Virus record (IMG/VR): IMGVR_UViG_3300032245_001746
Coordinates: 1-64,000 of that record
Strand: one strand, 5' to 3'
Length of the DNA stretch: 64,000 nt
The notes beneath the pieces are model-generated. The model ran no database searches and was not told the origin of the DNA. It saw only the letters and a list, made by a program, of their open reading frames with translations. The position numbers and the translations under genes are program-made. Positions 18,627 through 35,666 of the stretch are shown one piece after another (position 1 is the stretch's first letter; every line of letters starts with the position of its first letter).

Positions 18627-21260
18627 CTATATTACAATTAATTCTGGTTTCTTTTTAGGCTTAACAACATCCATAAAAGGACGCTTCATTACTAATAATC
18701 TAGTATCATCTTCTTTTTTTTCTGGAATTTCTTTCCATCTAATAGCTTTAGGAGGACTGTCAAATGTATAATTCTTAAAAGGAGGTTCTGGTTTCTTTAA
18801 CCTTATTTTAAGGAAATTACCTTTTCTAATATCAGACTCCCAATATTCTAAATCAGAAGCAAATCTTTGATAATCGACATCCCAAAAAGTTACTTTAAAT
18901 TTAAAAGAATCGGAATCCTCCATAGTAACCTCATAATATACAGTACCTTTAGCAGATTCTTTACGCTTTGGTTTTTCTATAACCTGCGCTTCAACCATAG
19001 AAATACAAATATTATCTTTAGAATCAAAATCAGAAATGGTAAATCCACCAGAATAATCTGGACTTGAGTCCATCAAATGATTCCAACTAAATCCATAACA
19101 AGAAGATTCTGCGACTTGTACTGGTTCATTAAACAATTTTTGCAAATCTTCATCAATTTCTACTTGAATATCAAATTCATCTAATGACAACAAAGAATCT
19201 TGCTCATTTTTAAGAACATTGCTTTCTTTGGATTTTTTATATTTCTTCAATAACTTCCAAGTTTCATGTATTATATCTTTTTGTTCGTTTGAATCAATAA
19301 TTTCTTCACGAAACTTAAAATCATTAAATGATTTAAATGAAGTTTCATCAAAATTTTCAAATTTATCAAAAAATAATTCTGAGAATTCATCTTCAAAAGA
19401 AACTTTCAATTCCAAAATTAATTTAGAAACACTTTTAGCATATCGATCATTTCTTGACGAAATCTTTTTTTGCTCTTCTTTAAAGTATTCATAATATGAA
19501 TATAATTTAGTTCTGTCTGCGTCTTTAAATAATCCAAGAGAAATTAAAGGTTTTAAAACCTTTGCATCTGTACCGAATCGACTTAAAAAATCAACAAATG
19601 AAGAATATGGTTGATTTTCAACAATTCTTTGTGCCACTTCTTCTCCTATTCCTTTTATATTAGAAAATCCAATATAAATTTCATCATCAACAATAGAAAA
19701 ATTATCTTTAGACTTATTCAAATCTAAAGGTTTAATTTTTACATTCATACTTTCAGCTTCTCTTCTATATTCTTTTATTTTAACATCATCTTTTACAGAT
19801 TTTAATATTCCAACAAAAAAATCTAATGGATAATGTGCTTTTAAATATAAAAGGCGAGCAGACAAAATTGTGTAACAAACAGCATGACTTGAATTAAATC
19901 CATATTCGGCAAAAGCTTCTATTTGAGTCCACAATTCTTCAACTTGTTCTTTTGTCCAAGCTAAAACTTTTTGTCCATTTTCAATAAACATATCTTTATA
20001 TTTTTGAAATACTTTAACTTTCTTTTTGGAAATTGCTTTTCTTATTATTTCACAATGCATTTCTGGAATTCCGCCAACAACATTCAATATTTTTAATGTT
20101 TGCTCCTGAAAACACATAACACCATAAGTTTTTTTCAAAATTGGCTCTAATACTGGATGCAATTCATAATATTCTCTTCCCTTTTTTCTTTCAATAAAAC
20201 GTTCATCCATTTTCATAGATAATGGACCTGGACGGTAAATAGACGAATAAATTACCAAATCATAAAAAATATCAACACCACCCTTTTTAACCATTTCTCT
20301 AATACCATCAGAGTCAAACTGAAATATGCATTTTAATCTACCTTGATTCGCTAAATTTAATGCTTTCAAATCAGTAATATAAGCATCTTCATTAGACCAG
20401 TCTGGACAGTTTTCATAAGCACAAATAGAACTTATTCCCAATCTTTGTTTGACAGATTTAGTTATTTGAGCCAACTGTGTTAGATTAGATAATCTTAACG
20501 TATCTATCTTAATAAGACCCAAAGGTCCCAAATCAGTTCCTAATAATCCTTCACCAAAAGCAGAAACATATTTATCACTTTCTGTTTTAACGAACGGAAC
20601 TATATTGTCAATTCTTTGATTTGAGATAATCAAGCCACCAGCATGAGTGCCAACTGTTTTGTTTCTGTTAATTATTCTTCTTACTACATCTGCAACTTCT
20701 GGATTTTCTTCGCAATATTTGCGTAAGTCTGGATATTCCTCAATTGCTTTATCTAAAGATAAAACTTTTCCATCTTCATCTTTAAGACCAATTTTTGTAG
20801 TTATATTTAATATTTCATTACGATCTTTATCGTAAACCCTTGCAGCATCTAAAAATGATGATTTAATCTTAAATGTTCCATATGTTCCAATTGCACATAC
20901 ATTATCTTCACCAAACGTTTTTGGTGCCCAAACATTTCTTATGTAATCACATACTTCATCCTGAAAGTCCGTATCAATATCAGGAAATTCGCCCTGAACC
21001 ATTCGTGGCTCAATATTTATGTCAAAATTATCAACCATACCTAAAAGGTAAGTTATCAACAAATTATTTTCATTATTTTCAAACTTATCGCCATTTTTAA
21101 ATAATTCAAAAATATAATCAAATTCCATTTGATTATCAATTTGTTTGATTTCGTATAAAAGTCGGTCTTGATGTTTTTTATCTTCATTTAATCCAAGTTG
21201 CTTTAATTTTAAATAACAAGCACTTATTATCTCTTTTTTTGGATCAACAGAAACACTCAT
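18627..21260 (-). CDS. dnaE: DNA polymerase III alpha, C-terminal (catalytic Asp, fingers, HhH, OB) subunit of split DnaE
   Basis: PDIDTDF, HAGG, KIDTL, IFQF, YRPGP, QEQ, AEYGFNSSHA, HhH IKGIG; no PHP domain. Confidence 0.93.
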   Translation of the reverse strand: MSVSVDPKKEIISACYLKLKQLGLNEDKKHQDRLLYEIKQIDNQMEFDYIFELFKNGDKFENNENNLLITYLLGMVDNFDINIEPRMVQGEFPDIDTDFQDEVCDYIRNVWAPKTFGEDNVCAIGTYGTFKIKSSFLDAARVYDKDRNEILNITTKIGLKDEDGKVLSLDKAIEEYPDLRKYCEENPEVADVVRRIINRNKTVGTHAGGLIISNQRIDNIVPFVKTESDKYVSAFGEGLLGTDLGPLGLIKIDTLRLSNLTQLAQITKSVKQRLGISSICAYENCPDWSNEDAYITDLKALNLANQGRLKCIFQFDSDGIREMVKKGGVDIFYDLVIYSSIYRPGPLSMKMDERFIERKKGREYYELHPVLEPILKKTYGVMCFQEQTLKILNVVGGIPEMHCEIIRKAISKKKVKVFQKYKDMFIENGQKVLAWTKEQVEELWTQIEAFAEYGFNSSHAVCYTILSARLLYLKAHYPLDFFVGILKSVKDDVKIKEYRREAESMNVKIKPLDLNKSKDNFSIVDDEIYIGFSNIKGIGEEVAQRIVENQPYSSFVDFLSRFGTDAKVLKPLISLGLFKDADRTKLYSYYEYFKEEQKKISSRNDRYAKSVSKLILELKVSFEDEFSELFFDKFENFDETSFKSFNDFKFREEIIDSNEQKDIIHETWKLLKKYKKSKESNVLKNEQDSLLSLDEFDIQVEIDEDLQKLFNEPVQVAESSCYGFSWNHLMDSSPDYSGGFTISDFDSKDNICISMVEAQVIEKPKRKESAKGTVYYEVTMEDSDSFKFKVTFWDVDYQRFASDLEYWESDIRKGNFLKIRLKKPEPPFKNYTFDSPPKAIRWKEIPEKKEDDTRLLVMKRPFMDVVKPKKKPELIVI

Positions 21261-21763
21261 TTTAAATCAACTTTCTTCAAAGAAAAACCCATAGCCAAAA
21301 ACAGATTGTACAAATATTTGCCAGAAAGTAAAGTTATTCCTTTTGAAGTTTTTTCACTATTTCCAGCTACATTTAATATTTTAATATTATTTGTTGTAAT
21401 CCAATTAATTACTTTATCTGTTTTTATTGGATCATTTAAATCAACATCAATATATGGCTTATTATAATAATTAATTGCTTTTAATGTACAAATTTCGCCA
21501 GCAGAATTTTTATGTGTAAAAATTCTTAAAGTACCATCAGCATCTTTCACATTACAATAAGTTCTTGGAGAATAACTAACTGATTTATGTTCCTTTGCAT
21601 TATATGTTATTGCATATTCTGGTCTGGGTCCATCTAACGTCTTAAATCCTTTTGGCATTGTGCCGCCAACTTCAACACCAAAACGATATGCAACAAATAT
21701 AGCTGAAATATCCACCCCATTTTGGAATCCAGATATCAACCGTTTAATCATTTTTAATCTCAC
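21257..21763 (-). CDS. cpYpsA/'putative molybdenum carrier' SLOG protein
   Basis: ISGFQNGVD, GGTMPKG, RTYCNV.DADGT, LNVAGN. Confidence 0.8.
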   Translation of the reverse strand: MRLKMIKRLISGFQNGVDISAIFVAYRFGVEVGGTMPKGFKTLDGPRPEYAITYNAKEHKSVSYSPRTYCNVKDADGTLRIFTHKNSAGEICTLKAINYYNKPYIDVDLNDPIKTDKVINWITTNNIKILNVAGNSEKTSKGITLLSGKYLYNLFLAMGFSLKKVDLK

Positions 21764-24230
21764 AATTTTTGATCTTGGTCATTTTAACAACTGTTTCTCC
21801 AACATCAAGTTTTACAATTTTAACTCCAGTTGTAGTACGTCCAGTTTCTCTAATATCTTCAGAATCTATTCTAATGCATTTTCCTGAAGAAGTCATAACC
21901 AAAATAGAATCACCTTTAGCTATATCAGACGCCCCTATTATGTTTCCATTTTTCTGAAGAGTATTCTTTTTAATTACAGAATATCCCTTAACATTTCTAT
22001 TAGATAATGATTTATATTCATCAGATTTTGTTTTCTTACCAAAACCACCAGATGTAATAACTAAAATATCTGGGACTTCCGTTTTATCTAAAGTAAATAC
22101 TTGAGCTACTTCATCTGAAGGGTCTAATTTTAGAGCCTTACTTCCTCTAGTTATTCTGCCTTGTGTTGGCACAATTTTTTCAGAATATCTAACAGATTGA
22201 CCACATGAAGTTACAATAAAAACATCTCTCTTTCCATCTGTAATACAGGCAAATTTAACTTCATCTTTATCATTTAAAGTAATTGCTGTTAATCCAGAAT
22301 TCTTTCTTGTAGTATCGTATTCTGATATTTCTGTCTTTTTAATTATACCATTTTTAGTAACTATAGTCAAATAACCTTTTTGCTTAATATCTTTTAAACT
22401 AATCATGTTGGTAACTAATTCACCAGTATTTAATTGCAACAAATTACTTACATGAGTACCCTTGGCTGTTTTACTAGTAATTGGTAATTGATAAGCCTTT
22501 CTTTGATAAACCAAACCATGATTAGTGAAAAATAAAATTAAATTTTTACTATTAGCCTCAAATATCTCAAACATATTTTCAGCAGCTTCCGGCTTATTTA
22601 CACCTAAAGAACCCACGCCACCACGATTTTGAATTCTATATTGTTCTGCTGGTACAGATTTTACATATCCATCACCAGTTAAAGATATTATCAACTGTTC
22701 ATTTTTAACCAAATCTTCATCATTAATTTCTTGTGCAACTTCTTCAATTGAAGTTAATCTATTGTCTCCATGTTTTTTAACTATTTCTTCTTGTTGAGAA
22801 ATAATAAAATTATTCATTTCATCTTTAGATGATAAAACTTTTTGAAGCCATTTAGATCTATCAACTAAATTTGTTCTTTCTTTTTCAAGATTAGCACCTT
22901 CTAATTTTGTTATTTGTTTCAACGTAATAGCTAAAACAGCTTTTGCTTGTTCAGATGATGAAACATATTTTTTACTTATAAGCTGATTTTCAGCATCTTC
23001 TGGATTATCTGAATCCATTATTAATTTAACAACTTTTTCAATTTTGTTAAGAATGCCTATCAATCCATCAAGAATATGAATTCTTGCAGAAGCTTTTTTG
23101 TATTCAGCATTAAATCTATTAGTTAGTACAATAACTCTATGATCTACAAAAGCTTTCACCAATTGAATTATATTAGCTTCAGGAACCACTTTGCCATCAA
23201 TTAATACAGTTGAATTGACTGATATAGATTTTCTTAAACAAGTCTGTTTTAACAGAATATTTAAAACTAATTCTGCATTGCCGTTTTTAGCAATATCAAT
23301 TACAATGTTGACACCAGTTTTTTTAGAAGAAAGATTTTTTAAATCTGAAATTCCAGAAATTTTATCTGTTTCTACTAAATTCTTAATTTCATTACAAAAT
23401 TGATCTGGACTTGTTTGATATGGAAGTTCGCTAATTATAATTTTAGACCCAGACTTGTCTTTTAATATATCATATTTACCTTCAAGTTTTATACTTCCTC
23501 TTCCAGTCTTATAATAATCCAAAACTCCATCTTGACCCAATAATTTCCCACCTGTTGGAAAATCTGGTCCTGGCATCAATTTAATTATTTTTTCATAAGA
23601 AACATTTGGATTTTTTATGTATTCTTTTACTACAGAAACAACTTCTTTTAAATTATGAGGCAACATTTTTGTTGCCCAACCAACAGCAATTCCTTCACAA
23701 CCATTTACCAACAAGTTTGGAATTAACGTTGGCAATATTGTAGGCTCTTCCATTTTTTCATTATAATTTGGAACAAAAGGAACAGCATCTTTACTGATTT
23801 CTTCAAGTAACAATTCTCCATATTTAGATAATTTAGCTTCAGTATAACGTTGTGCCGCACATGCATCACCATCAATATTCCCAAAATTACCCTGTCCTGT
23901 TAAAAGAGGATATCTTAAAACCCATGATTGAACCAATCTACATAGTGTGGGATAAACAACCATATCACCATGAGGATGGTAATTTCCTGAACAAAAACCA
24001 GTTATTTTAGCACATTTTTCTGTAGCGGAATTTGGATATAAATTCAATTCATGCATTGAATATAAAACTCTTCTTTGAGATGGTTTTAATCCATCTCTAG
24101 CATCAGGCAATGCTCTATCCTCAAGAGACATAAATGCATATTTTGTGAATCTGTTGTCTAAAACTAAAGCTAACTCTTCAGTGTTTAAATACTGATCTTG
24201 TTTAATATTTTTACTATCTTTTATTTTCAT
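21744..24230 (-). CDS. gyrA: DNA gyrase subunit A
   Basis: RALPDARDGLKP, YHPHGD, AAQRYTE, GPDFPTGG, GyrA-box QNRGGVG, beta-pinwheel repeats. Confidence 0.96.
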   Translation of the reverse strand: MKIKDSKNIKQDQYLNTEELALVLDNRFTKYAFMSLEDRALPDARDGLKPSQRRVLYSMHELNLYPNSATEKCAKITGFCSGNYHPHGDMVVYPTLCRLVQSWVLRYPLLTGQGNFGNIDGDACAAQRYTEAKLSKYGELLLEEISKDAVPFVPNYNEKMEEPTILPTLIPNLLVNGCEGIAVGWATKMLPHNLKEVVSVVKEYIKNPNVSYEKIIKLMPGPDFPTGGKLLGQDGVLDYYKTGRGSIKLEGKYDILKDKSGSKIIISELPYQTSPDQFCNEIKNLVETDKISGISDLKNLSSKKTGVNIVIDIAKNGNAELVLNILLKQTCLRKSISVNSTVLIDGKVVPEANIIQLVKAFVDHRVIVLTNRFNAEYKKASARIHILDGLIGILNKIEKVVKLIMDSDNPEDAENQLISKKYVSSSEQAKAVLAITLKQITKLEGANLEKERTNLVDRSKWLQKVLSSKDEMNNFIISQQEEIVKKHGDNRLTSIEEVAQEINDEDLVKNEQLIISLTGDGYVKSVPAEQYRIQNRGGVGSLGVNKPEAAENMFEIFEANSKNLILFFTNHGLVYQRKAYQLPITSKTAKGTHVSNLLQLNTGELVTNMISLKDIKQKGYLTIVTKNGIIKKTEISEYDTTRKNSGLTAITLNDKDEVKFACITDGKRDVFIVTSCGQSVRYSEKIVPTQGRITRGSKALKLDPSDEVAQVFTLDKTEVPDILVITSGGFGKKTKSDEYKSLSNRNVKGYSVIKKNTLQKNGNIIGASDIAKGDSILVMTSSGKCIRIDSEDIRETGRTTTGVKIVKLDVGETVVKMTKIKNCEIKND

Positions 24231-24231
24231 T

Positions 24232-27200
24232 TTATGCCTTTTTAATTACACTGTTTACTTGATTAATTATATGATCTTTTCTTAATTGTACGTTAGAACC
24301 CATCAATACAGAAACCATTCTTTCTGATTCTGCAAGATCGTTTAACTCTAATTTTATCAATCTTCTGTTTTCAACATTCATTGTTGTGTCAGCCAATTGA
24401 TCAGCATCCATTTCTCCCAAACCTTTAAATCTAACCACTTTCGATTTAGGATTTTGTTTCACTAATAATTGCATTTCTTGATCAGTCCATGCAAATATTC
24501 TACTTTTACCCAAATCAACACAATATAAAGGTGGTTGAGCCAAATATAAATGACCATTAGCAACTAAAGGCTTCATGTATCTGTAAAAGAATGTTAACAA
24601 TAAAGTCGAAATATGACAACCATCATCATCGGCGTCTGCCATTAAAATGATTTTATTATATCTTAATTTTTCAATGTTAAAATCTTCTTTAATTCCAGTT
24701 CCTATTGCTATAATCAATGATTGAATTTCTTTATTTTTTAATAAAGAAGCAATATCTTTCTTTTCAGCATTTATAATTTTACCTCTAATTGGCAAAATTG
24801 CTTGAAATTCTGGATCTCTTCCGTCTTTTCCTGATCCGGCTGCACTATCGCCTTCCACAATAAACAACTCTGAAATTGCAACATTTTCAGTATTACAATC
24901 ATAAAGTTTTCCTGGCATTCTATTAGATTTTCCAAGAAAACCTTTTCTTTTAATTAGGTCAGATTGTTTTTTAGCCGCTGTTCTTGCCTCTTGTGCAATT
25001 AATGCTCGTTCTACAATTTTTTTAACAATAGGTGCGTTTTTATCAAAAAACGAAGTCAGCATATTTGTAGTTAAATTACTTACTACAGTTTCAGCTTCTG
25101 TTGATCCTAATTTTGACTTAGTTTGTGACACAAATTCTGGTCTTGGAAATCTAATACTCACAATTGCAGACAAACCTTCTCTTACATCATCTCCATTTAA
25201 ATTAGGAGCATTTTCCTTTATTAATTTATTATTTCTAGCAAATGTGTTAACAACTCTTGTCAATGCAGTTTTAAAACCAGAAACATGAGTGCCACCATCA
25301 GTAGTTACAATATTATTTACAAAAGATATAATAGATTCGTCATCATCATTAGAATATAATAAAGCTATTTCAACTTGACATTGTTGTCCTGGTCTTGAAG
25401 TCAAATCAGATTTAGCAGAGGCATAAATAGGAGTTGCAGGATAAGTATCCTCTTTTCCTTCAGATAAATATTTTAAATAATCTACTATTCCGCCATCAAA
25501 ACAAAAAGTTTCATTAATTCCAGTTGATTCATTAATAAATGATATTTTTAATCCTTTATTAAGAAATGCCATTTCTTTTAATCTTTTTGTAATGATATTA
25601 TCATTGTATTTTATACCATTTTTAAAAATTTGCTTATCTGCATGCCATTGAATTTTTGTTCCAGTTTGTTTATCTTTCTTATCTAAAGATCTTATTTTTT
25701 GAATTTTACCTTTAGGCTTACCTTCAGAAAAAGATTGTTGCCATAAATATCCATCACGATGAACTTCTGCCACTAATAAATCTGATAAAGCGTTAACACA
25801 AGATGCGCCAACACCATGTAAACCACCAGAAGCGTCATAGCCTGATCCAGAACCACCAAATTTTCCTCCTGCATGAAGTACAGTTAAAACCACTTCTAAA
25901 GCTGATTTCTTTTCTGTTGGATGCATATCAACTGGAATACCTCGACCATTGTCCTCAATAGAAATTGTTTCACCATCTTTTTCTATTTTTATTTTTATTT
26001 CATTACAATGACCTGCCATTGCTTCATCAATTGAATTATGAAGTAAAATGCCTCCGCTGCCACCTACAAAATTTTCATCATCTTCAACTGAAAAGTCATA
26101 AACAAAAGGATGATTTTCACCATCAATTTTTTTGATTGATTTTATTTTTAATGCACCTAAATCGCAATTATTTTCTTTTGCATAATAACATCTGTAAGAT
26201 TTTTCATTTCCAATATACCATTCTACTTTATTTTTATAAAAACTAAAACTTTTTTGTATACTAAGCAACAAGTAAGAAAATTGATTTATTAAAACTTTAC
26301 TTGAAGACGTATATGCAAGTTTTTGTTTTAATTCTATGTTTTTATTTATAAATTGATTAGTTGGATAACCATCACCACTACTCATGGCAAAAACAAGTAA
26401 TTCTCTCTGTCTATCAGAACAATTCCAAATAAAACTAGGAATTGATTTCTTATAACAATTTCTTCCTAACTTGAAATAATCTGTAATCACAGCCACTGCT
26501 TTATTACAATAAACATTATTTGCAGTATCATGTGCTGGTCTAGTGCTTGGATTAAATCCAAAACAATTTTTAATTGTTTTTATAACTTGTTTTAAAAATT
26601 TTAATTCATGAGATCCAACAGATAACACACAATCTAGCATATCTTTGTTTGGTCTATGTCTCACACATCCTTCAGCTAAATAATATCCAACAAATTTAAT
26701 AAAATCATCATTAATATTTAAATATCTATTTATTTTAGATTTTTTGAATCCAATTTTACATTTTTTAGGAACTTTAGATTGTAAACCAAGTTCTACTATA
26801 AGTTTTACAGGAACATAACCAAACCTTTTAAAATTTGAATAATAATTAGAAGGCTTATTTTCTTTAATTAACCAGTCTTTAATTAAAGATCTATTTAATC
26901 TTATAAAATCTGAAATAGATTCAAAATAAACGTTAGAACCTTTATGATTATAAAAAATATCTAAACAATCTAATTCTTCATTGTAATCAACATTGTTTAA
27001 ATCCACTTTACTTGGAACTATCACATATTGACCTTCAATTAAATCTTTTGTTTTGATTGATTTAAATATTGAATCATTACATTTTGTAAATAGCGAATGG
27101 CAATCAGTTACATTTACTTTCAAGTTATTTTGTAATTTGACTTCATATAAATCATGACTTGTTTTGTGTTTGTATAATCTAGTTATTTTCTTCCAATGCA

Positions 27201-27498
27201 TCATTCCTTTTTTTGAAGCAGAATATGCATACATTTCCAGACCAGAAGAGTCAAAACTATTTGCATCTCCAGGAATATATTTGTCAATAATATTTCCTAT
27301 TTCAATTAAATTGAATTTATCATCTTGTTTAATTAAAACAAGCGTATCTGATGTGACAGAATTATCACATATCTCCCATACTAAATGATGTAATCCTTTA
27401 GTATCACTATCTCCAACATACATTCCTGGATTAAATCTTACTGCATCTAGTCCTTCTAAAACTCTAATTTGAGATGCATCATAATTATTTTTTGTCAT
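24232..27498 (-). CDS. gyrB: DNA gyrase subunit B (intein-containing)
   Basis: LEGLDAVR..PGMY, EICDN/SIDE, GRGIP, GGLHGVG, EGDSA, PIRGK, DADDDG, RFKGLGEM. Confidence 0.96.
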   Translation of the reverse strand: MTKNNYDASQIRVLEGLDAVRFNPGMYVGDSDTKGLHHLVWEICDNSVTSDTLVLIKQDDKFNLIEIGNIIDKYIPGDANSFDSSGLEMYAYSASKKGMMHWKKITRLYKHKTSHDLYEVKLQNNLKVNVTDCHSLFTKCNDSIFKSIKTKDLIEGQYVIVPSKVDLNNVDYNEELDCLDIFYNHKGSNVYFESISDFIRLNRSLIKDWLIKENKPSNYYSNFKRFGYVPVKLIVELGLQSKVPKKCKIGFKKSKINRYLNINDDFIKFVGYYLAEGCVRHRPNKDMLDCVLSVGSHELKFLKQVIKTIKNCFGFNPSTRPAHDTANNVYCNKAVAVITDYFKLGRNCYKKSIPSFIWNCSDRQRELLVFAMSSGDGYPTNQFINKNIELKQKLAYTSSSKVLINQFSYLLLSIQKSFSFYKNKVEWYIGNEKSYRCYYAKENNCDLGALKIKSIKKIDGENHPFVYDFSVEDDENFVGGSGGILLHNSIDEAMAGHCNEIKIKIEKDGETISIEDNGRGIPVDMHPTEKKSALEVVLTVLHAGGKFGGSGSGYDASGGLHGVGASCVNALSDLLVAEVHRDGYLWQQSFSEGKPKGKIQKIRSLDKKDKQTGTKIQWHADKQIFKNGIKYNDNIITKRLKEMAFLNKGLKISFINESTGINETFCFDGGIVDYLKYLSEGKEDTYPATPIYASAKSDLTSRPGQQCQVEIALLYSNDDDESIISFVNNIVTTDGGTHVSGFKTALTRVVNTFARNNKLIKENAPNLNGDDVREGLSAIVSIRFPRPEFVSQTKSKLGSTEAETVVSNLTTNMLTSFFDKNAPIVKKIVERALIAQEARTAAKKQSDLIKRKGFLGKSNRMPGKLYDCNTENVAISELFIVEGDSAAGSGKDGRDPEFQAILPIRGKIINAEKKDIASLLKNKEIQSLIIAIGTGIKEDFNIEKLRYNKIILMADADDDGCHISTLLLTFFYRYMKPLVANGHLYLAQPPLYCVDLGKSRIFAWTDQEMQLLVKQNPKSKVVRFKGLGEMDADQLADTTMNVENRRLIKLELNDLAESERMVSVLMGSNVQLRKDHIINQVNSVIKKA
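26035..27360 (-). mobile_element. LAGLIDADG intein in GyrB (442 aa)
   Basis: Starts SVTSDT, ends VYDFSV...LLHN before Ser; endonuclease motifs GYYLAEG and MSSGDG. Confidence 0.9.
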
Positions 27499-28470: not shown

Positions 28471-28534
28471 AATTTTTTCCTTAAATAAAGTTTAATGATA
28501 AATCGAGTTATTTTAAAAATTCTTTAATTGATTT

Positions 28535-28858
28535 CTACAATAAAGTTGATTCAATTGTATTGAATTCATTTTCGTTTTTAAGTTTAATTAAACATTTAAT
28601 TAAAGCATCAATAAAAGATCTTGTTCCATCTTCTTGAGCTATACAAAAATCATTTGATGAAATATAAACACCCCATTGATCTCTTATAAATTCAAATAAT
28701 AAAGTTTCTTCATTGTTTGAATTTAAAAAAATTAAACTAGATCCATTTTCTGGATCTAGTTTAATTTCAATTTTGGGAGATTCATTTGATCCGCAATTAT
28801 CAAATTCAAGCGAATATACTGTTTGTAAATTTTGATTTACCATAAAAACAAATTTCAT
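28535..28858 (-). CDS. Hypothetical protein
   Basis: 107-aa ORF. Confidence 0.5.
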   Translation of the reverse strand: MKFVFMVNQNLQTVYSLEFDNCGSNESPKIEIKLDPENGSSLIFLNSNNEETLLFEFIRDQWGVYISSNDFCIAQEDGTRSFIDALIKCLIKLKNENEFNTIESTLL

Positions 28859-28882
28859 TAAAAAGTATTTAACATATTTATA

Positions 28883-29653
28883 TTAACATAAATATCCAGC
28901 TCTAAATACATATTCAGAATGAGAATATTGTACAAGACTATATGGCATTAAAATAGGTTTTGAAAAAATTGTTTTTGGATATCTTCCAAAGATGTATTTT
29001 TGTACGTTACAATCTGATATTATCAGATCAATATCATTTAAAACAGAACTTGAAATCTTATCAAGTAAAACTTGAGGAATTATAATATAATCAAAATGTA
29101 ATTTTGGATTAATTTTATTATCAATAAAATATTCTAATGAAAAATTAGATTTATTAAAATTATCTAATATATTAAAAATTAATATATCTAATTGTTTAGC
29201 TATTTGGTGTGAAACGTTTGGTTCCGAACATTTAAAAGCAAACGTTAAAATTGGAATTCCTATTGCATCAAAAATGTCAAATTTATTATAAAAAAAACAT
29301 AAAGATGCTGGACTTATTGCTGGTTGTATAGCTATACATTTTCTTAATGAACACTTCAACCAAGATTCTTTCATTAAAGATAACAAATTGTTTTTATCAT
29401 AAAATCCACATCTATCACAATAATTGTCACAATTATTTAATAAAATTGAAAGTGTTGTTCTATCTTGTTCTGATATATCATTTAAAAAATGAGTTTTTGA
29501 CCATTTTTCAACAATTTTATCAATTTCATATTTAATGTTAGAAAAATCTTCCAAAGAATTCTGTCTATCAATCATTAACTCTTCATTAGAAGATGAAAAA
29601 TCAAGTAATTCTTCACCCAATAAATTTTTATTTAAATCATCTGACTCTTTCAT
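28883..29653 (-). CDS. Truncated/divergent gp23 major-capsid-protein paralogue
   Basis: VEKWSKTHFL..., ILLNN and IAIQPAISPASLCFFY resemble gp23 KW...LLENQ and VQPM..P.GL.F motifs. Confidence 0.55.
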   Translation of the reverse strand: MKESDDLNKNLLGEELLDFSSSNEELMIDRQNSLEDFSNIKYEIDKIVEKWSKTHFLNDISEQDRTTLSILLNNCDNYCDRCGFYDKNNLLSLMKESWLKCSLRKCIAIQPAISPASLCFFYNKFDIFDAIGIPILTFAFKCSEPNVSHQIAKQLDILIFNILDNFNKSNFSLEYFIDNKINPKLHFDYIIIPQVLLDKISSSVLNDIDLIISDCNVQKYIFGRYPKTIFSKPILMPYSLVQYSHSEYVFRAGYLC

Positions 29654-29678
29654 AAATTGCTTTCATTAAAATTAAGAG

Positions 29679-30043
29679 TGGATACGGCGAGAGTTGAACT
29701 CGCGTCTAACATAAAATAACTGAAAAAATACTACATGTTTATTCAATTTTTAATTTAATTAAAATTTAATTAATTGACAAAATAAAATTTTAACGATCAA
29801 ATTTAAAATAAACTTGAAAATTTCAACTAATCTTAACTTAAATCTCGTTGAATAATTTAAGTGCAATCAAATTTTACGAAAGATTTTTTGACGCTATTGA
29901 TTTCGCTTCTCAAATCTTGACTGACTAAGCAGCCAAACGAACAGTTTCGCCATTTACGGCTTGATCAATTTTTAAGTAGCCATTGATCAACTACTACATG
30001 CGTTTTGCAATTAATATTATGATATCGAATGCCCAACGTACCC
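29679..30043 (-). ncRNA. ssrA: tmRNA (365 nt), tag peptide (A)GETVRLAA
   Basis: 5' GGGTACG pairs with 3' CGTATCC-A (G3-U wobble); T-arm GCGAG-TTCAACT-CTCGC; PK1-like GTAG/CTAC and TTGATCAA pairing; tag ORF 29951-29925 ending GCT GCT TAG. Confidence 0.93.
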
Positions 30044-30162
30044 ATAATTATAACACAACACTATATATTACCATCATTTGATTTCTTGTAAAGCTATTTT
30101 TACAATTATCAACAAAAAAACAAGTCAAATTTACCAAAGATGGAACTTTTTAAAACAATATA

Positions 30163-30660
30163 TTAATATCTGGAATAATCGTACGCTTTAAATTTTCCAC
30201 TTTTAGTTGAACCAACTTGACAACAATCATATTCATTAGCCCAATCTGGCAGATCTTTGTAAGGATGATCTATATTCAATTTTTCCATGATAATAATTGG
30301 AATTCTTGTTTTATTTAAAAAAAACATTTTGCAATTTGCATGTTGCATATTATTTCTTGAATTATATTCATCTTCATTTGAAGCCATTCCTGTTTCACAA
30401 CTTGGAACTTTAATCACAACATTTCTGTTCTTATTGATAAAAGTACACCTGTGTCTGCCGCATTCTGGATATTTGCCAAATCCAAATTTCATTAAAAACT
30501 CTGTACACTTTGGAAGAAAAACATTTTGCCAAAAACCTTGATCTTCAAATTTATATTTAGAATAAATTCCATTATTTAATTCATTAAATAAAAATTCATC
30601 TAACTCTTGAATTGAATTTGCTAACGATTCATTAATCATATATAAACTAAAATTTAACAT
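30163..30660 (-). CDS. Minimal protein-kinase-fold protein with capsid-targeting-like N-terminus
   Basis: GRHRCTF...VIKVP...NEDE...IIME...DCCQVG...AYDY; start MLNFSLYMINES. Confidence 0.5.
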   Translation of the reverse strand: MLNFSLYMINESLANSIQELDEFLFNELNNGIYSKYKFEDQGFWQNVFLPKCTEFLMKFGFGKYPECGRHRCTFINKNRNVVIKVPSCETGMASNEDEYNSRNNMQHANCKMFFLNKTRIPIIIMEKLNIDHPYKDLPDWANEYDCCQVGSTKSGKFKAYDYSRY

Positions 30661-30771
30661 AATTATAATTATATATTCAAACAAACAAAATCATTAAATA
30701 AAATATAGAAAAATTCAAAGCAATTTAAAATTTTATAAAGATTAAACATAAATATAAAAAAGGAGTTTTTT

Positions 30772-30942
30772 ATGAAAATAAATAATAATAACAAAAAATT
30801 ATTAGGTGTATGTTCTGGAATTGCTAATTCCTTTAATGTTGACCCAATAATTACTAGAATTATTTTTTTAATAAGCATGTTTTTATCATTTGGAACAGCT
30901 TCACTAGTTTATTTAATTTTATGGATTTTAATGGAAAAATAA
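30772..30942 (+). CDS. pspC: PspC-domain membrane protein (56 aa, missed by ORF track)
   Basis: KKLLGVCSGIANSFNVDPIITRIIF...YLILWILM; SD AAGGAG; CATAAATA upstream. Confidence 0.9.
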   Translation: MKINNNNKKLLGVCSGIANSFNVDPIITRIIFLISMFLSFGTASLVYLILWILMEK

Positions 30943-30958
30943 CCCAATAAAGGAAAAT

Positions 30959-31909
30959 ATGTTTAAAAAATTTAAATCTTTCTTAGAAGAAAAAGAAAAA
31001 TCATTAGTTGGTGATGTAAAAACAAAATTGGTCGCAGATTACGAAGGACCAGAAGAAAAATATCCACCATCAAATGGCAAAAAAGAAAAAGTAGCACCAT
31101 ATAAAACTCCAACATCAAGTGTTGATCCTAATAAAAAAGAAAAAGGATTAGCTGATTTAGGAGATGGCGATTTAGTGTATGAACCAGATATTCATGGAGA
31201 AAAAGAAAAAAACTTAGGTAATTATCCTAAATCTAAAAATGAAGCATTCATTGAAAAAACTTCAAAACTAGACAATAAAACATTTATTGAAATGATGCTT
31301 AAAAAGAATAAAAAAAATAAAAGTTTAATGGAAGGTCCAAAAAATCCAAACAACAAATTTGAAGTAATTAAATTCGTTGCAGACCTTGCAGCTAAAGATA
31401 AAACATGTGTTGAAAACTTTATTCATGATTCTAAAAGAAGCGGATCTTTAAAAGGTTTACTTGAATATGCATTAAATTTAACAGAAACATATGAAATATT
31501 AGCTGAATTATTTCAAGATAAAACACAAGGAAACTCCAGATTTAATCGATTAGAAAGAGCTTTAGAACAAGTTGGATTGCCACAACATAAATCATCAGAT
31601 TTAGAACTTAACAAAAAATCAAGTATGGATGACATGGACGACGATGATATGTCTCCAGATGATGATATGGATGGTATGGACATGGATGATGAAGATATGG
31701 ACGACGATATGTCATCAGATGAAGACATGGATGATATGGATATGGATGATGAAGATATGGACGACGATATGTCATCAGATGAAGATATGGATGATATGGA
31801 CATGGATGATGATATGTCACCAGATAAACATCCAAATAAAATGAAATCACATGATGATATGGGAGTTGGAATGCTTAAAAAGAATCCTTTTTCTAAAGGA
31901 TTTAAATAA
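30959..31909 (+). CDS. Putative internal head protein with Asp/Met-rich repeats
   Basis: MFKKFKSFLEE N-terminus; MDDEDMDDDMSSDED repeats. Confidence 0.65.
   Translation: MFKKFKSFLEEKEKSLVGDVKTKLVADYEGPEEKYPPSNGKKEKVAPYKTPTSSVDPNKKEKGLADLGDGDLVYEPDIHGEKEKNLGNYPKSKNEAFIEKTSKLDNKTFIEMMLKKNKKNKSLMEGPKNPNNKFEVIKFVADLAAKDKTCVENFIHDSKRSGSLKGLLEYALNLTETYEILAELFQDKTQGNSRFNRLERALEQVGLPQHKSSDLELNKKSSMDDMDDDDMSPDDDMDGMDMDDEDMDDDMSSDEDMDDMDMDDEDMDDDMSSDEDMDDMDMDDDMSPDKHPNKMKSHDDMGVGMLKKNPFSKGFK
31625..31822 (+). repeat. 60-bp tandem repeat (~3 copies) encoding D/M-rich 20-mer
   Basis: atggatgatgaagatatggacgacgatatgtcatcagatgaaga... at 60-nt period. Confidence 0.9.
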
Positions 31910-32780
31910 TTTTTCTTAATTCATATCTAATAAATGGTCCAGATCTACTGCCTTCTCTTGGAGAAGACAAGGTATACAAATTATTATAAGATCCATTATC
32001 ATCTTTTAAAGGAATATATTTATAAACAAAGTCTAAGGTGCCTGCCTTAGACTTTGTTGGCGTTAACATCCAAGCGTGTTTTATTTCTTTGGAACTTAAT
32101 TTACCAATATGTGCAAATTCTGAGAAAGGAATTGCATCTGGCATATCTTGATGACTTTTCACATTATCTCTTGATATTGCAATTACAATAGAAGGTTTTT
32201 TAATAGATGTTTGAAATTGCATTGGAGCAAAACCATTAGCATAATATTCTGCTGTTTCTGCAGAGCCATAGAAAGTTAAATCATTTTGAATATCTCCCAA
32301 ATTATAATCATTTCTGCTTTGAATAAATCCATTTTTTCTTATGAATTGCCATTCTTCATAAGACATTCCTCGATAAACCAAATTTGGATCTTGTGGAATT
32401 TCTTTAACAGCATCTTTTGGAGATTTATGCAAATAATAACCTGTTTTACCGCCATTGTGTTTTAAATCTAAATGATAAAAATCCCCATTTGGATCAGCCA
32501 TTTCTGGCTTTCTAAATAACTTTGGTTTATTTTGAAAAGAAAAAATAATTTCACTATATCCAGAATGTATTTTCTTCAAAAAAATATCATATCTGTCTCT
32601 AAAATTAGTAAATTCATTTCCATAATATTGGTGAAAAGATTTTCTAACAAATTGTTTTAATTCATCTGAATTAACATTTTTAACAGGTCTCATTCCTGGA
32701 CCTACAACTAAAGGAAATTCTTTTATATCATTATTAATGTAAATAGATTCAGAAAATAACCAATCTTTAAAATTAAACAT
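31902..32780 (-). CDS. Putative ADP-ribosyltransferase-fold protein with capsid-targeting-like N-terminus
   Basis: VYRGMS, LTFY...AEYYA, SEF; MFNFKDWLFSES. Confidence 0.45.
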   Translation of the reverse strand: MFNFKDWLFSESIYINNDIKEFPLVVGPGMRPVKNVNSDELKQFVRKSFHQYYGNEFTNFRDRYDIFLKKIHSGYSEIIFSFQNKPKLFRKPEMADPNGDFYHLDLKHNGGKTGYYLHKSPKDAVKEIPQDPNLVYRGMSYEEWQFIRKNGFIQSRNDYNLGDIQNDLTFYGSAETAEYYANGFAPMQFQTSIKKPSIVIAISRDNVKSHQDMPDAIPFSEFAHIGKLSSKEIKHAWMLTPTKSKAGTLDFVYKYIPLKDDNGSYNNLYTLSSPREGSRSGPFIRYELRKII

Positions 32781-32784
32781 ACAA

Positions 32785-33057
32785 TTATTTATGTTTAATT
32801 AATTTGTTTAATTTGATATTTTCATCAAAATAAATAGTAATTGATCCTTTATATTTAGTCTCATATGGAGCACCTTCAAAACGCTCTAGATGAACTACAT
32901 TATCAAATTCATCTGTAATATAAAAACCATAAAACAAAAAACTTGAATAAAAAACAAATTTATTTTTTCCAAATTTCAATTTATTACAAAAACTATATGG
33001 ATTATTAATATCAGAATAAAGATTAATTTTATAATTTTGGTTCATGAAAATGGACAC
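32785..33057 (-). CDS. Hypothetical protein
   Basis: 90-aa ORF. Confidence 0.5.
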   Translation of the reverse strand: MSIFMNQNYKINLYSDINNPYSFCNKLKFGKNKFVFYSSFLFYGFYITDEFDNVVHLERFEGAPYETKYKGSITIYFDENIKLNKLIKHK

Positions 33058-35666
33058 TCCTCTGTTGATCCATTTTTTATAATATCAATATTTGCACTAA
33101 GTTTTTTAATTGGATCTGAAGAAAATCTAATTTTCATAGATTTACCACCACGTGCAGGACTTAAAAATCTAGAAAACAATAAATCATGTTTTATAGGATC
33201 AACATCAATTAAACCTAAAGCATAAGCTACTAAACTACCTCCAATAGAATTATGTACTAAAAAACTACTAGTTAAATAATTATGATTATCCTCTATTTCT
33301 AGATCATAAACAAATTTTGGACCTTTAATCTCTTTAATAGATTTAATTCTCAACATCAAACCATCTTTTGTTGATCTCCACACATATTTTTTATTACAAT
33401 TTTTTGAACATCCTATTCTAACATCTAATGGACAATATAGAACATATGATGGAGAAATATTTTTATAATCTTCTCTCAAATCTGTTCTTGTATATTTTTT
33501 AATAGAACATGGCAAACCTATTCTTAATAATAAAAATCTAATTTGCTCTGCTAGTTTATATGAAACAGTTTCAAATTTTGCTTTACCCTCATCTTCATAG
33601 CCATCTGCTAAAAAATATCCACGTAAATATGATTCCACAATGGATACGGGTGCATTTAATATGCAATCAGGAACATATTTACTGTGAGATGTATGTTCAT
33701 ATTCTGGATGTAGTTCGTCAAACAATTTCCTCAAATAAGGAGAGGAAAAAATTGTTTGTATTAAACTTTTATTTTTAGATAAATATTCTTTACAATTAAA
33801 ATTGTAATTTTTCATTAATGAACAAACTTCATTTATGTGTTTTCTAATTAGAGAATTATCACAAAATCCAACCTTTAAAGATCCATCAGAATTAGTCCAA
33901 CCATCACCAACAAAAACTCCCAATATAAATGCCCAATCTTCATTAAGACTCCAAATTCTATTATTTTTTATAGAAGTTTTTCCACCTTTGGAATTAAAAG
34001 TACTTACAACAAAGTTATCATCAAATGATAATTCGCTACCATTTTTAGATTTTCCTTTTGAAAATTTTGATAAATCCACCGTGTAATTTTCAACAACCTC
34101 TACTTTAGGAAAAGGCACAAAACACCAATCTCCAACAGACAATTCCTGTGCTTGAAACCAATCCAAATCTTGAGTAGGTTCTATCCAACATTTTCTAGAT
34201 TTTTTTGTAGAGTCAGACCATTTATCCCAATTTTTGGGTCTTTTTGATTTTTCAGCATATATTTTATGGTCTAAAGTTAACGTAACGCCAACTTCATCTC
34301 CATAATATGTCCTGATTTTTCTAACATTTTCATTAAATGGATACTTCATTGTTTTTAAAACTTTTTTAACAGTTCCATCAACAGTCCATATTTTATCACC
34401 AACTTTAATATTTTTTAATATATTTGTACTTCCATTTTTTAAACGAATTGGAGTATTATGTTTCAAACAGCCCCTGCCTGGTCCGACAGCCTCTGAGCCA
34501 TCGCCCCATCCTAATATTAGTGGAGAAACTCTTCTAGCTTCATCAGTAATCATTTTTTGAACTAAAAAGTAAGAACAAAAACCTTTTTCTTTAATCAACT
34601 CATATTCTTCTTTAATTCTATTGAAGTACTGTTTAGTTTTTGGTATTTTTTTAAATTCAAAACCTTGTTTTATTGCATCTAACAACTTCTGATCATCGTT
34701 TTCAAATGATGGAAATTTAATTGTTCTATCTATTTGAAATTCAACGCCTTTTGCCAATTCACAAATTTTAACAGTATTTTGTTTTGCTTGTTTAAAGATA
34801 TCATAATCCATTACGTCTTGATAATCAGACAACCATTTTTCATTTATTTCTTCTTCAGATTTCATCCAAAGATTTTGATCTTGTATTTCAAATACATCTC
34901 CATCTTCAACAAGTTTTTGTTCAACTTGTTTCATTGTTTTACCCATTTGCATCATCATCATGATAGACTGCATTTTCATATCTTCTTTAAGACAGACGTG
35001 ACAATCATTTGTAATGATAAGTGGTAAACCATATCTTTCTGCTGCTTTCATAATAAAAACATCATATGGTTTTTGTTTTTTAAAATCCAACAACATCATT
35101 TCCAAATAAAATTTATCGTGAAACATATTTTTGTATATTTCAACCATTTTAAATCCAGCTTCTTCGCCACCTTTATCGAAAGCTTGTCCTATTTCGCTAT
35201 TATAGCAACATGATGTAAATATAATTCCTTCTTTGTGTTCTACCAATTGTTGTCTATTAACTCTCGGTTTATAATAAAATCCTTTTTTATATCCAAGAGT
35301 AGATAATTTTACTAAATTTGAATAACCTGTAACGTTGTAAGCAATACCTAATAAATGATATGATTTTTTAAAAAATGGTTTTTGATCTTCAGACATATCT
35401 TTATAAAACAAAGAACTTTCACCATGTTTTAATTCTGTTTGAAGCGGATTAACATATAATTCACAAGCAAAAATTGGACTAATTTTATTATCTTCACATG
35501 TTTTAATTTGTCTTGGGACTGCACCCATAACACCATGATCTGAAATAGTTAAAAATTTTTGATTAATTTGCTTTGCTCTTGCTGCATATTCGTCTGGCAA
35601 GCCATAACCATCAAGAAGACTAAAATGACTATGTAAATGTAAATGTTCAAAACCAGTTATTTCCAC
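33042..35666 (-). CDS. dnaE: DNA polymerase III alpha, N-terminal PHP + partial palm subunit of split DnaE (intein-containing)
   Basis: HLHSHFSLLDG, SDHG, KPR, NDCH; GPGRG/S, GSLVAYALG, LLFSRFLSPAR; ends before PDID. Confidence 0.93.
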   Translation of the reverse strand: MEITGFEHLHLHSHFSLLDGYGLPDEYAARAKQINQKFLTISDHGVMGAVPRQIKTCEDNKISPIFACELYVNPLQTELKHGESSLFYKDMSEDQKPFFKKSYHLLGIAYNVTGYSNLVKLSTLGYKKGFYYKPRVNRQQLVEHKEGIIFTSCCYNSEIGQAFDKGGEEAGFKMVEIYKNMFHDKFYLEMMLLDFKKQKPYDVFIMKAAERYGLPLIITNDCHVCLKEDMKMQSIMMMMQMGKTMKQVEQKLVEDGDVFEIQDQNLWMKSEEEINEKWLSDYQDVMDYDIFKQAKQNTVKICELAKGVEFQIDRTIKFPSFENDDQKLLDAIKQGFEFKKIPKTKQYFNRIKEEYELIKEKGFCSYFLVQKMITDEARRVSPLILGWGDGSEAVGPGRGCLKHNTPIRLKNGSTNILKNIKVGDKIWTVDGTVKKVLKTMKYPFNENVRKIRTYYGDEVGVTLTLDHKIYAEKSKRPKNWDKWSDSTKKSRKCWIEPTQDLDWFQAQELSVGDWCFVPFPKVEVVENYTVDLSKFSKGKSKNGSELSFDDNFVVSTFNSKGGKTSIKNNRIWSLNEDWAFILGVFVGDGWTNSDGSLKVGFCDNSLIRKHINEVCSLMKNYNFNCKEYLSKNKSLIQTIFSSPYLRKLFDELHPEYEHTSHSKYVPDCILNAPVSIVESYLRGYFLADGYEDEGKAKFETVSYKLAEQIRFLLLRIGLPCSIKKYTRTDLREDYKNISPSYVLYCPLDVRIGCSKNCNKKYVWRSTKDGLMLRIKSIKEIKGPKFVYDLEIEDNHNYLTSSFLVHNSIGGSLVAYALGLIDVDPIKHDLLFSRFLSPARGGKSMKIRFSSDPIKKLSANIDIIKNGSTEECPFS
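33249..34469 (-). mobile_element. LAGLIDADG intein in DnaE-N (407 aa)
   Basis: GRG|CLKH...TLDH...VYDLEI...VHN|S; GVFVGDG and RGYFLADG. Confidence 0.92.

What the first reader, a model, noticed from the sequence alone, without database searches (positions are those of the whole stretch)
18627..35666. Intein-independent split DnaE: active site divided between two genes about 12 kb apart, with a degenerate duplicated junction
Seen: 35666-33042 encodes the PHP domain with apparently intact metal ligands, GRG/S, GSLVAYALG and FSRFLSPAR. It stops about 30 aa later, just before the PDID motif. 21260-18627 supplies PDIDTD, HAGG, KID, fingers, HhH and OB. Its first ~90 aa (RLLYEIKQI...FDYIF...ENNLLITYLLG) look like a decayed copy of the region ending the first gene (RIKEEYELI...FCSYF...GSLVAYALG). 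The only intein is a complete cis intein, and the cyanobacterial split-intein site (AEY/GFN) is uninterrupted. Known: in DnaE the GS motif and the two Arg of FERFLNPER bind dNTP, while PDxD plus KxD provide the catalytic Asp residues. Inference: an obligate heterodimeric C-family replicase formed by duplication and reciprocal loss, with a separable proofreading subunit.
Basis: partly seen in the sequence, partly recalled or inferred. Interest (0 to 1): 0.85.

Follow-up and report, generated by a model that had tools for sequence, protein, structure and literature searches.

The report
Two-gene DnaE polymerase in huge phages
This huge-phage genome encodes its bacterial-type replicative DNA polymerase (DnaE) as two separate genes cut through the middle of the catalytic site, and the same cut is conserved in thousands of uncultivated phage sequences, so it is a real two-subunit design and not a broken gene.

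Summary
Gene 35666-33042 (-) encodes the PHP exonuclease domain, the first part of the palm, a complete LAGLIDADG intein placed inside the G|S nucleotide-binding motif, then GSLVAYALG..FSRFLSPAR, and stops 35 residues later. Gene 21260-18627 (-), 11.8 kb downstream, starts with a 92-residue leader. It then supplies PDIDTD, HAGG, K-I-D, thumb, fingers, HhH and OB. Profile coverage is complementary: TIGR00594 positions 1-392 against 398-885.

This is not an assembly error and not unique to this phage. The same break without an intein occurs in 13 further IMG/VR contigs, always N-half upstream on the same strand, 2.7-15 kb apart. Protein databases hold over 1300 C-half and over 2400 N-half clusters.

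The leader is homologous to the end of the N-half (hhalign E 2e-6). It is conserved and folds confidently, so it is a retained module, not decay. A few relatives carry a fused gene lacking both leader and tail. These nest inside the split clade, which points to re-fusion.

The most likely mechanism is a two-subunit DnaE whose nucleotide-binding arm is supplied in trans; association and activity are untested. No description of this full-size split was found. The closest published case is a minimal split Pol III alpha predicted in T4-like jumbo phages.

The parts
33042..35666 (-). dnaE N-half gene (874-aa precursor; 467 aa after splicing): PHP domain, N-terminal palm helices, GS motif, FSRFLSPAR, 35-residue tail
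   Evidence: PHP E 2.4e-34. TIGR00594 positions 1-364 plus a post-intein stretch.
34470..35666 (-). N-extein (residues 1-399), ending in GPGRG
   Evidence: All nine PHP metal ligands align with Taq and Mtb DnaE1.
33249..34469 (-). Complete cis-splicing intein with a LAGLIDADG homing endonuclease (residues 400-806). It sits between the G and the S of the GS motif, and the +1 nucleophile is that Ser.
   Evidence: PF14890, PF14528, TIGR01443. Intein-free orthologues read GPGRGSAVGS.
33045..33248 (-). C-extein (residues 807-874): SIGGSLVAYALG..FSRFLSPARGG plus a tail (KSMKIRF...). The tail aligns with the position of the PDxDxDF strand but has no Asp residues.
18627..21260 (-). dnaE C-half gene (877 aa): leader, catalytic Asp strand, thumb, fingers, HhH, OB
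   Evidence: AF2 mean pLDDT 89.5. Foldseek match to DnaE structures E about 1e-33 over about 870-920 columns.
20985..21260 (-). Leader (residues 1-92): conserved helical copy of the N-half region around the GS motif. It lacks the GPGRGS loop and the FSRF..AR segment.
20967..20984 (-). PDIDTD (P93-D98). D94, D96 and D98 are invariant in 64 family members. K251 and D253 further downstream are also invariant.
21257..21763 (-). cpYpsA (SLOG) gene. Its stop overlaps the C-half start codon (ATGA). The same domain is fused to a C-half in relative P0329.

Best explanation
The two genes encode the two subunits of one DnaE-type (C-family) replicative polymerase.

Subunit N, after its intein splices and recreates the GS motif, contributes:
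- an intact PHP 3'-5' exonuclease;
- the N-terminal palm helices;
- a C-terminal arm carrying the residues that hold the incoming dNTP (GRGS and the Arg residues of FSRFLSPAR).

Subunit C contributes:
- the three catalytic Asp residues and the Lys of KxD;
- thumb, fingers, HhH and OB domains;
- its own folded copy of the palm scaffold helices (the leader).

The polymerase site exists only when the arm of N docks onto C.

The arrangement most likely arose by partial duplication of the junction region followed by reciprocal loss of catalytic elements. It is ancient in a large clade of huge phages. It has been reversed at least once by a deletion that joins ...FSRFLSxAR directly to FPDxDxD.

Shown: complementary sequence content, conservation, co-occurrence, homology of the duplicated junction, and the existence and phylogenetic position of fused forms.

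Inferred: physical association, activity, the docking geometry, and the order of evolutionary events.
For: Complementary content:
- Non-overlapping profile coverage and matching structure mapping.
- Neither half reaches the TIGR00594 cut-off of 434 bits (252.6 and 353.0). The fused relative scores 673.5.

Selection on both halves of the site:
- D94, D96, D98, K251 and D253 are invariant in 64 C-halves of 27-82% identity.
- RGS, R425 and R431 are invariant in 44 N-halves.
- GS..AR is the most conserved N-half segment.

Co-occurrence:
- Including the window, 14 contigs carry both genes: three loci and ten more. N is always upstream of C on the same strand, 2.7-15.2 kb apart.
- Flanking synteny is conserved: SpoVR-(ClpP)-N ... 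C-o135/o196.

Size of the family:
- 1344 C-half clusters at E<=1e-30. The top 120 have no PHP domain.
- 2405 N-half clusters at E<=1e-20, about 450 aa, with PHP plus PF07733 only.
- 87 of 102 representatives at 50% clustering are split (with one miscall corrected).

Fused relatives:
- L001, P0272, P0276 and P0277 read ..LLFSRFLSxARxxFPDxDxDF with neither leader nor tail.
- This shows the two parts are collinear pieces of one enzyme.

AlphaFold2:
- The N-half alone has pLDDT below 50 at the GS loop and the last 21 residues, while its PHP domain is confident.
- The C-half leader is confident.
Against: - No direct evidence of a complex.
- Both subunits carry a copy of the same helices, and it is unclear how both fit in one palm.
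- Only 64 kb of a genome of at least 320 kb was visible. Another polymerase elsewhere cannot be excluded.
- The re-fusion reading rests on trees with some long branches. In the fused relative L001 a SLOG gene sits directly upstream of the fused gene, as one does upstream of the C-half here. That could also be read as the ancestral arrangement.
Confidence: 0.8

Rival explanations
1. The C-half is a self-sufficient polymerase that binds dNTP with other residues. The N-half is an independent PHP exonuclease or phosphoesterase that merely kept a vestige of the palm.
For: The C-half folds confidently by itself, including the leader. It retains every metal-binding and DNA-binding element. Stand-alone PHP proteins exist: the Foldseek list includes RNase AM and other PHP phosphoesterases.
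Against: The GS..AR stretch is the best conserved part of the N-half (0.84) and is invariant across the family. That is hard to explain if it has no role. The C-half leader has specifically lost GPGRGS and FSRF..AR in all members. Fused relatives use the N-half version of these motifs.
Confidence: 0.1
2. The halves are joined after transcription or translation (a split intein, trans-splicing intron or similar) into one ordinary DnaE chain.
For: DnaE is joined in this way in cyanobacteria and in metagenomic 'fractured genes' (PMC2677866). The genome is rich in inteins: dnaE-N, gyrB and recA.
Against: The N-half tail is 10-35 residues, variable, and does not begin with Cys or Ser. The leader does not end in HN followed by a nucleophile. 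No Hint domain was found outside the cis intein. Rfam finds no group I or II intron in the window, only a tmRNA. The leader is a conserved folded helical module, unlike a C-intein.
Confidence: 0.03
3. It is an artefact or a dying gene: a misassembly, or a dnaE pseudogene broken by rearrangement.
For: The source is a single metagenomic contig. Mobile elements (inteins with homing endonucleases) lie nearby.
Against: The same break is present in 13 further contigs from different samples and in thousands of protein clusters. Reading frames are intact and catalytic residues invariant.
Confidence: 0.01

Closest known systems
Minimal split DNA polymerase III alpha of group 2.2 (T4-like) jumbo phages, predicted by Iyer, Anantharaman, Krishnan, Burroughs and Aravind, Viruses 2021;13:63 (PMC7824862)
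   Same: Both are C-family catalytic modules encoded as two stand-alone proteins by distant genes. The division falls between the NTP-binding N-terminal part and the Mg2+- and DNA-binding C-terminal part. Neither uses an intein. Both are known only by prediction.
   Different: The published version is described as a minimal core without the other Pol III alpha domains, and it accompanies a family B polymerase. Here the enzyme is full size (PHP with all nine ligands, thumb, fingers, HhH, OB). It is closely related to ordinary DnaE and carries a duplicated junction (leader and tail). No sequence link between the two families was seen in searches of cultured phages.
Cyanobacterial split DnaE joined by the split DnaE intein (Wu et al. 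1998; Caspi et al. 2003; as cited in PMC2677866 and PMC3919608), and metagenomic 'fractured' dnaE genes
   Same: dnaE is encoded in two genes at separate loci.
   Different: In those cases each half ends or begins with an intein half, and protein trans-splicing makes one chain. The break is at a different site. Here AEYGFN is uninterrupted, the break is at Taq R458/P461, and neither end has intein features.
Ordinary single-chain DnaE of bacteria and cultured phages (e.g. Taq 2HPI, Mtb DnaE1 5LEW, Bacillus phage G gp329)
   Same: Same domains in the same order. All catalytic and PHP residues are present. Foldseek and HMMER match both halves.
   Different: Ordinary DnaE is one polypeptide. No cultured phage in the 50,697-record collection and none of the best 80 cellular hits has the split form.
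Other polymerases split without an intein (family B polymerase in two genes in Methanothermobacter and in phiKZ-like phages). This comparison is from my own knowledge and was not checked here.
   Same: A replicative polymerase assembled from two gene products.
   Different: Different polymerase family and fold. Those splits fall between domains, not through the core of the nucleotidyltransferase fold.

Membership tests
C-family DNA polymerase, DnaE type (Pol III alpha) | PHP domain at the N-terminus (nine metal ligands in proofreading-competent members) | tested here: met
   PF02811 E 2.4e-34 on the N-half. H, H, D, H, E, H, C, D and H all align with Taq and Mtb DnaE1 (PMC5636811).
C-family DNA polymerase, DnaE type (Pol III alpha) | Pol-beta-like palm with the GS motif and Arg residues for dNTP binding, plus an Asp triad (PDxD ... 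KxD) | tested here: met
   All elements are present but spread over two proteins. GRG|S and FSRFLSPAR are on the N-half (the GS motif is restored only by intein splicing). D94, D96, D98, K251 and D253 are on the C-half.
C-family DNA polymerase, DnaE type (Pol III alpha) | Fingers, HhH and OB domains | tested here: met
   PF17657 E 2.2e-36 and PF14579 E 1.6e-16. The OB fold appears in the AF2 model, with Foldseek hits to DnaE over about 870-920 columns and weak hits (E about 0.03-0.1) to SSB OB folds.
C-family DNA polymerase, DnaE type (Pol III alpha) | Single polypeptide reaching the curated family score | tested here: not met
   TIGR00594 cut-off is 434.35. The N-half scores 252.6 and the C-half 353.0. 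The fused relative L001 scores 673.5. The enzyme works like a DnaE but is a two-chain variant.
Split-intein DnaE (cyanobacterial type, or 'fractured genes') | N-intein at the end of the first product and C-intein at the start of the second | tested here: not met
   No Hint or intein match outside the cis intein. The tails are short and variable with no Cys1. The leader is helical and does not end in HN plus a nucleophile.
Split-intein DnaE (cyanobacterial type, or 'fractured genes') | Break at the AEY|GFN site | tested here: not met
   AEYGFN is continuous at C-half residues 451-456.
Minimal split Pol III alpha of jumbo phages (Iyer et al. 2021) | Split between the NTP-binding and the Mg2+/DNA-binding subdomains, on distant genes | tested here: met
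   The break lies between FSRFLSPAR and PDIDTD, and the genes are 11.8 kb apart.
Minimal split Pol III alpha of jumbo phages (Iyer et al. 2021) | Minimal core without PHP or other Pol III alpha domains, accompanying a family B polymerase | tested here: not met
   Full PHP, fingers, HhH and OB are present. No PolB was seen among the window ORFs scanned against Pfam, but the rest of the genome was not visible.
Class 1 intein with LAGLIDADG homing endonuclease | Cys1, a block B Thr-x-x-His, a C-terminal His-Asn, a +1 nucleophile, and an endonuclease domain | tested here: met
   CLKHN..., TLDH...LVHN|S. PF14890, PF14528 and TIGR01443 match. Splicing itself was not tested.

The most novel reading that the evidence does not exclude
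In this phage clade the replicase is deliberately kept in two pieces, so that polymerase activity is switched on only by assembly. A flexible nucleotide-binding arm on the exonuclease subunit completes the catalytic subunit in trans. The supply of that subunit is itself gated: by intein splicing inside the GS motif in this phage, and by a stop-codon frameshift right after the HLHLH motif in many relatives. The conserved leader and tail would be the docking devices, which are dispensable once the genes re-fuse.
Probability: 0.3. Interest if true: 0.8.

Novelty: new variant of a known kind. Interest (0 to 1): 0.62.

Why it matters
C-family polymerases replicate all bacterial chromosomes and are drug targets. 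Every characterised member builds its Pol-beta-like active site from one chain. Here nature has cut that site between the dNTP-binding motif and the catalytic aspartates and kept the cut for a long evolutionary time in a very large group of huge phages.

That offers four things:
- a natural complementation system for asking how the palm of Pol III alpha folds and how the PHP proofreader talks to the polymerase site;
- a worked example of gene fission by partial duplication, with an apparent reversal;
- a simple annotation rule, since thousands of database entries called 'DNA polymerase III alpha' of about 450 or about 870 residues are halves, not fragments;
- a phylogenetic marker for this clade of huge phages.

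Tried and rejected
Rejected hypotheses:
- Assembly error or pseudogene. Rejected by conservation in independent contigs.
- Split intein. Rejected because the tail and leader have no Hint features.
- RNA-level joining. The Rfam gathering scan of the whole window finds only a tmRNA.
- 'Decayed' leader. Rejected by conservation and fold confidence.
- Fused form as the simple ancestor of all split forms. Holding all fused forms together is rejected by the AU test (p 0.0012, delta lnL 160). It is seen in 0 of 200 bootstrap trees under LG+C20. In the N-part tree the fused forms are also nested.

Searches that found nothing:
- Megablast of the 18-kb region against cultured phages gave no match.
- Cultured phages hold only full-length DnaE, plus one uncultured fused relative, LR756511.
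- Cellular genomes gave only ordinary DnaE at 33% identity or less among the best 80.
- Six literature searches found no description of this full-size split.

Steps that failed or could not be done:
- My first classing by the position of PDxD miscalled P0378, a truncated call of a full-length gene. This was corrected.
- A regex attempt to place the inteins of relatives' C-halves failed. I make no claim about their sites.
Full report
**What is in the window**

The window is the first 64 kb of IMG/VR contig UViG_3300032245_001746 (319,857 bp). It is about 27% G+C and almost all genes are on the minus strand.

ORF 35666-33042 (-) gives an 874-residue protein. It contains, in order:
- a PHP domain;
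- the N-terminal palm helices up to GPGRG (residues 395-399);
- a 407-residue intein with a LAGLIDADG endonuclease (starts CLKHN, ends VHN, followed by Ser);
- a 68-residue C-extein that reads SIGGSLVAYALG..FSRFLSPARGG, followed by a 33-residue tail.

The intein sits between the G and the S of the GS motif. Intein-free orthologues read GPGRGSAVGS. Splicing is therefore needed to rebuild the nucleotide-binding loop.

ORF 21260-18627 (-) gives an 877-residue protein. It has a 92-residue leader, then PDIDTD (93-98), HAGG (206-209), K251-I-D253, an uninterrupted AEYGFN (451-456), and HhH and OB regions.

The domain evidence is complementary:
- Pfam places PF07733 profile positions 66-98 on the first protein and 100-259 on the second. 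PHP is on the first; finger and HHH_6 are on the second.
- NCBIfam TIGR00594 is covered 1-392 by an intein-free N-half and 398-885 by the C-half. Neither half reaches the 434-bit cut-off (252.6 and 353.0). A fused relative scores 673.5.
- Against Taq Pol III alpha, the N-half ends at R458 of FLNPER and the C-half begins at 458, just before D463/D465.
- All nine PHP metal ligands align with Taq and M. tuberculosis DnaE1 (PMC5636811).

The 11,781 bp between the genes hold gyrB (with an intein), gyrA, a cpYpsA gene, a tmRNA and ORFs of unknown function. The stop of the cpYpsA gene overlaps the C-half start codon (ATGA).

**The split is real, conserved and widespread**

Scans of IMG/VR found the same architecture without any intein in the following loci:
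- L003: N-half at 5247-6773, C-half at 9998-12724.
- L006: halves 8.3 kb apart.
- L009: halves 4.1 kb apart.

Scans with family alignments found ten further contigs that carry both halves. In every case N lies upstream of C on the same strand, 2.7-15.2 kb apart.

Flanking synteny is also shared: SpoVR-(ClpP)-N-half ... C-half-o135/o196.

The large protein collections show the size of the family:
- The C-half finds 1344 clusters at E<=1e-30. The best 120 are almost all 820-920 residues with PF07733+PF17657+PF14579 and no PHP.
- An intein-free N-half finds 2405 clusters at E<=1e-20. Typical members are 450-475 residues with PHP plus PF07733 only.
- Among 102 representatives at 50% clustering that cover the catalytic core, 87 carry PDxD at about residue 80-95, which is the split form. 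This count follows, corrected for P0378.

All N-halves stop 10-35 residues after FSRF[LM]SxARGG[KR]. All C-halves begin with the same leader.

No cultured phage among 50,697 records has the split form. None of the best 80 cellular hits has it either.

**The duplicated junction**

The consensus leader reads roughly ..ERLLKLC..KGL...Y.DRLKEEIKEI...E.DYFL......NENNLL.PYLLG.V.DFDI......GEFPDID. The consensus N-half tail region reads ..ERLKEEV.KGF..R.LP.T.EY.DRIKEEYSLI..KGFSSYFL.....AVGPGRGSAVGSL.CYCLGITDVDP..EGLLFSRFMSEARGGRS.VLEF.

A profile-profile comparison gives 89% probability and E 2.3e-6 over the first 45 columns. tblastn aligns the leader to the pre-PDxD region of ordinary phage DnaE genes.

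Relative to the N-half, the leader lacks about 19 residues centred on GPGRGS. That is exactly the intein insertion point. It also lacks the LLFSRF..AR segment.

In the other direction, the N-half tail (RSIVLEF; KSMKIRF in the window) lines up with FPDxDxDF of fused genes but has no Asp residues. I read this alignment by eye and it is weaker evidence.

So each product keeps a catalytically stripped copy of the element that the other supplies. This is what partial duplication followed by reciprocal loss would leave.

The leader is not decaying:
- E37 and N63 are invariant, and R33, Y49, L72 and L73 are conserved in at least 90% of 64 sequences down to 27% identity.
- Its mean pairwise identity is 0.35, and 0.47 for residues 60-80. 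The catalytic core has 0.50, the OB region 0.29 and the linker 0.17.
- AlphaFold2 predicts four helices at pLDDT about 90.

**Fused relatives**

LR756511.1, a 595-kb uncultured phage (locus L001), encodes one 1179-residue DnaE. Its N part is 53% identical to the window N-half and its C part 41% identical to the window C-half.

Its junction, and those of P0272, P0276 and P0277, reads ..LLFSRFLSxARxxFPDxDxDF. Neither leader nor tail is present.

On the catalytic core these fused genes are nested deep inside split forms:
- A quick tree of 102 rows shows this.
- A careful LG+C20+F+G4 tree of 57 rows puts the L001/P0272/P0276 clade as sister to the split P0250 (100/98). That group lies inside clades supported at 97/92, 100/97, 99/94 and 99/96. 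None of 200 bootstrap trees has the split forms as one clade.
- The AU test rejects holding all fused forms together (p 0.0012).
- On the N part, the five fused genes form one 99% clade that again lies inside the split N-halves, though some branches are long.

All split forms share the same derived leader, so a single fission with later re-fusion is more economical than many parallel fissions.

There is a counter-argument. A SLOG-family gene lies directly upstream of both the fused gene (YAcAr type in L001) and the window C-half (cpYpsA type). This could be read as an ancestral position for a fused gene.

Either way, the fused genes show that N-half(1..AR) plus C-half(FPDxD..) is one functional, collinear enzyme.

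**Mechanism**

The best-supported model is a two-subunit DnaE.
- Subunit N carries the PHP proofreader and a C-terminal nucleotide-binding arm.
- Subunit C carries the metal-binding Asp triad, the KxD Lys and all the DNA-binding domains.

Consistent with an arm that needs its partner, the N-half modelled alone has a confident PHP domain but pLDDT below 50 at the GS loop and over its last 21 residues. The GS..AR stretch is nevertheless the most conserved part of the N-half (0.84 against 0.69 for PHP).

Association, activity and the geometry of docking are inferences. I could not run a complex prediction.

I rank the rivals as follows:
- A self-sufficient C-half with an unrelated PHP enzyme: about 0.1.
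- Post-translational or RNA-level joining: about 0.03.
- An artefact: about 0.01.

**Comparison with what is known**

Six full-text searches found no description of this full-size split. Surveys of bacterial C-family polymerases mention only the cyanobacterial split-intein case and fragmented genes put down to frameshifts (PMC3919608; PMC12926913).

The closest precedent is the 'minimal' Pol III alpha of T4-like jumbo phages. It is predicted to be split between its NTP-binding and Mg2+/DNA-binding parts on distant genes (PMC7824862). The boundary is the same, but that protein lacks PHP and the other domains and accompanies a family B polymerase.

The split-intein dnaE genes of cyanobacteria and of metagenomic 'fractured genes' (PMC2677866) differ in both site and mechanism.

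I therefore class this as a new variant of a known kind. The individual sequences are already in public databases, mostly annotated as 'DNA polymerase III alpha subunit' or left unnamed.

**Verdict**

- Observation: confirmed.
- Interpretation: supported, with corrections. The leader is a conserved module, the N-half is more than a proofreader, and the trait belongs to a family rather than to this genome alone.
- Interest: 0.62.

Noticed in passing
Relatives only: L009:9990-10010, L003:5350-5440, and 16 of 80 N-half loci among L090-L169 (e.g. L136, L143, L148, L110): In many relatives the N-half gene has a TAG directly after the HLHLH codons of PHP motif I. The frame resumes after 7 nt (TAG-YTA-Y, +1 frame reads SY[ST]DFS) in 8 loci, or after 8 nt (+2/-1 frame) in 8 loci. 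The short upstream frame (M..EIVGFEHLHLH) stays intact. 57 of 120 database N-half clusters are called without the HxH motif, and some begin with the frame-shifted reading (NIFTCT..). This looks like stop-codon-stimulated programmed frameshifting or a short bypass that controls the supply of the N subunit. The window's own gene is uninterrupted.
   Followed up: partly
L003:5376-5421: A second, 46-nt insert with a perfect 12-bp hairpin (AAGTGCCCCGCT / AGCGGGGCACTT) lies between the FSLL and DGFG codons of the same gene. A stop codon follows the last Leu codon, and a Leu codon follows the hairpin. This is reminiscent of translational bypass elements. It was seen only in this locus.
   Followed up: no
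window 29676-30043 (-): A phage-encoded tmRNA (Rfam 76.6 bits; ARAGORN tag peptide GETVRLAA) lies between the two dnaE halves.
   Followed up: no
window 24232-27498 (-) and 60772-63108 (-): There are two more intein-containing replication or recombination genes. gyrB carries an intein in its ATPase domain. recA carries an intein with a LAGLIDADG_2 endonuclease. That makes three inteins in 64 kb.
   Followed up: no
window 21257-21763 (-); P0329; L001:18347-18796: A SLOG-family gene sits immediately upstream of the C-half, with the cpYpsA stop overlapping the start codon. A metagenomic protein (P0329) is a cpYpsA-C-half fusion. The fused DnaE of LR756511 is preceded by a YAcAr SLOG gene. This suggests a functional link between SLOG proteins and this polymerase.
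   Followed up: partly
window 36766-41773 (-) and 35884-36579 (-): A PrkA / DUF444 (YeaH-like) / SpoVR gene trio and a ClpP gene lie directly upstream of the N-half. SpoVR-(ClpP)-N-half synteny is conserved in five relatives.
   Followed up: no
P0337, P0358, P0359, P0363, P0375, P0380 (protein ids): One sub-clade of C-halves carries an extra 80-180-residue N-terminal extension before the leader. It has no Pfam match.
   Followed up: no
P0366, P0379 (protein ids): Near the base of the family are full-length proteins with a uracil-DNA glycosylase domain fused in front of PHP-DnaE. P0379 is sister to a split form with a different leader (P0362). This may be a second fission or fusion event.
   Followed up: no
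P0012, P0103 (protein ids): C-halves on contigs of 546 kb and 42 kb are deposited as Crenarchaeota and Thorarchaeota MAG proteins. These are probably huge-phage contigs binned into archaeal genomes.
   Followed up: no
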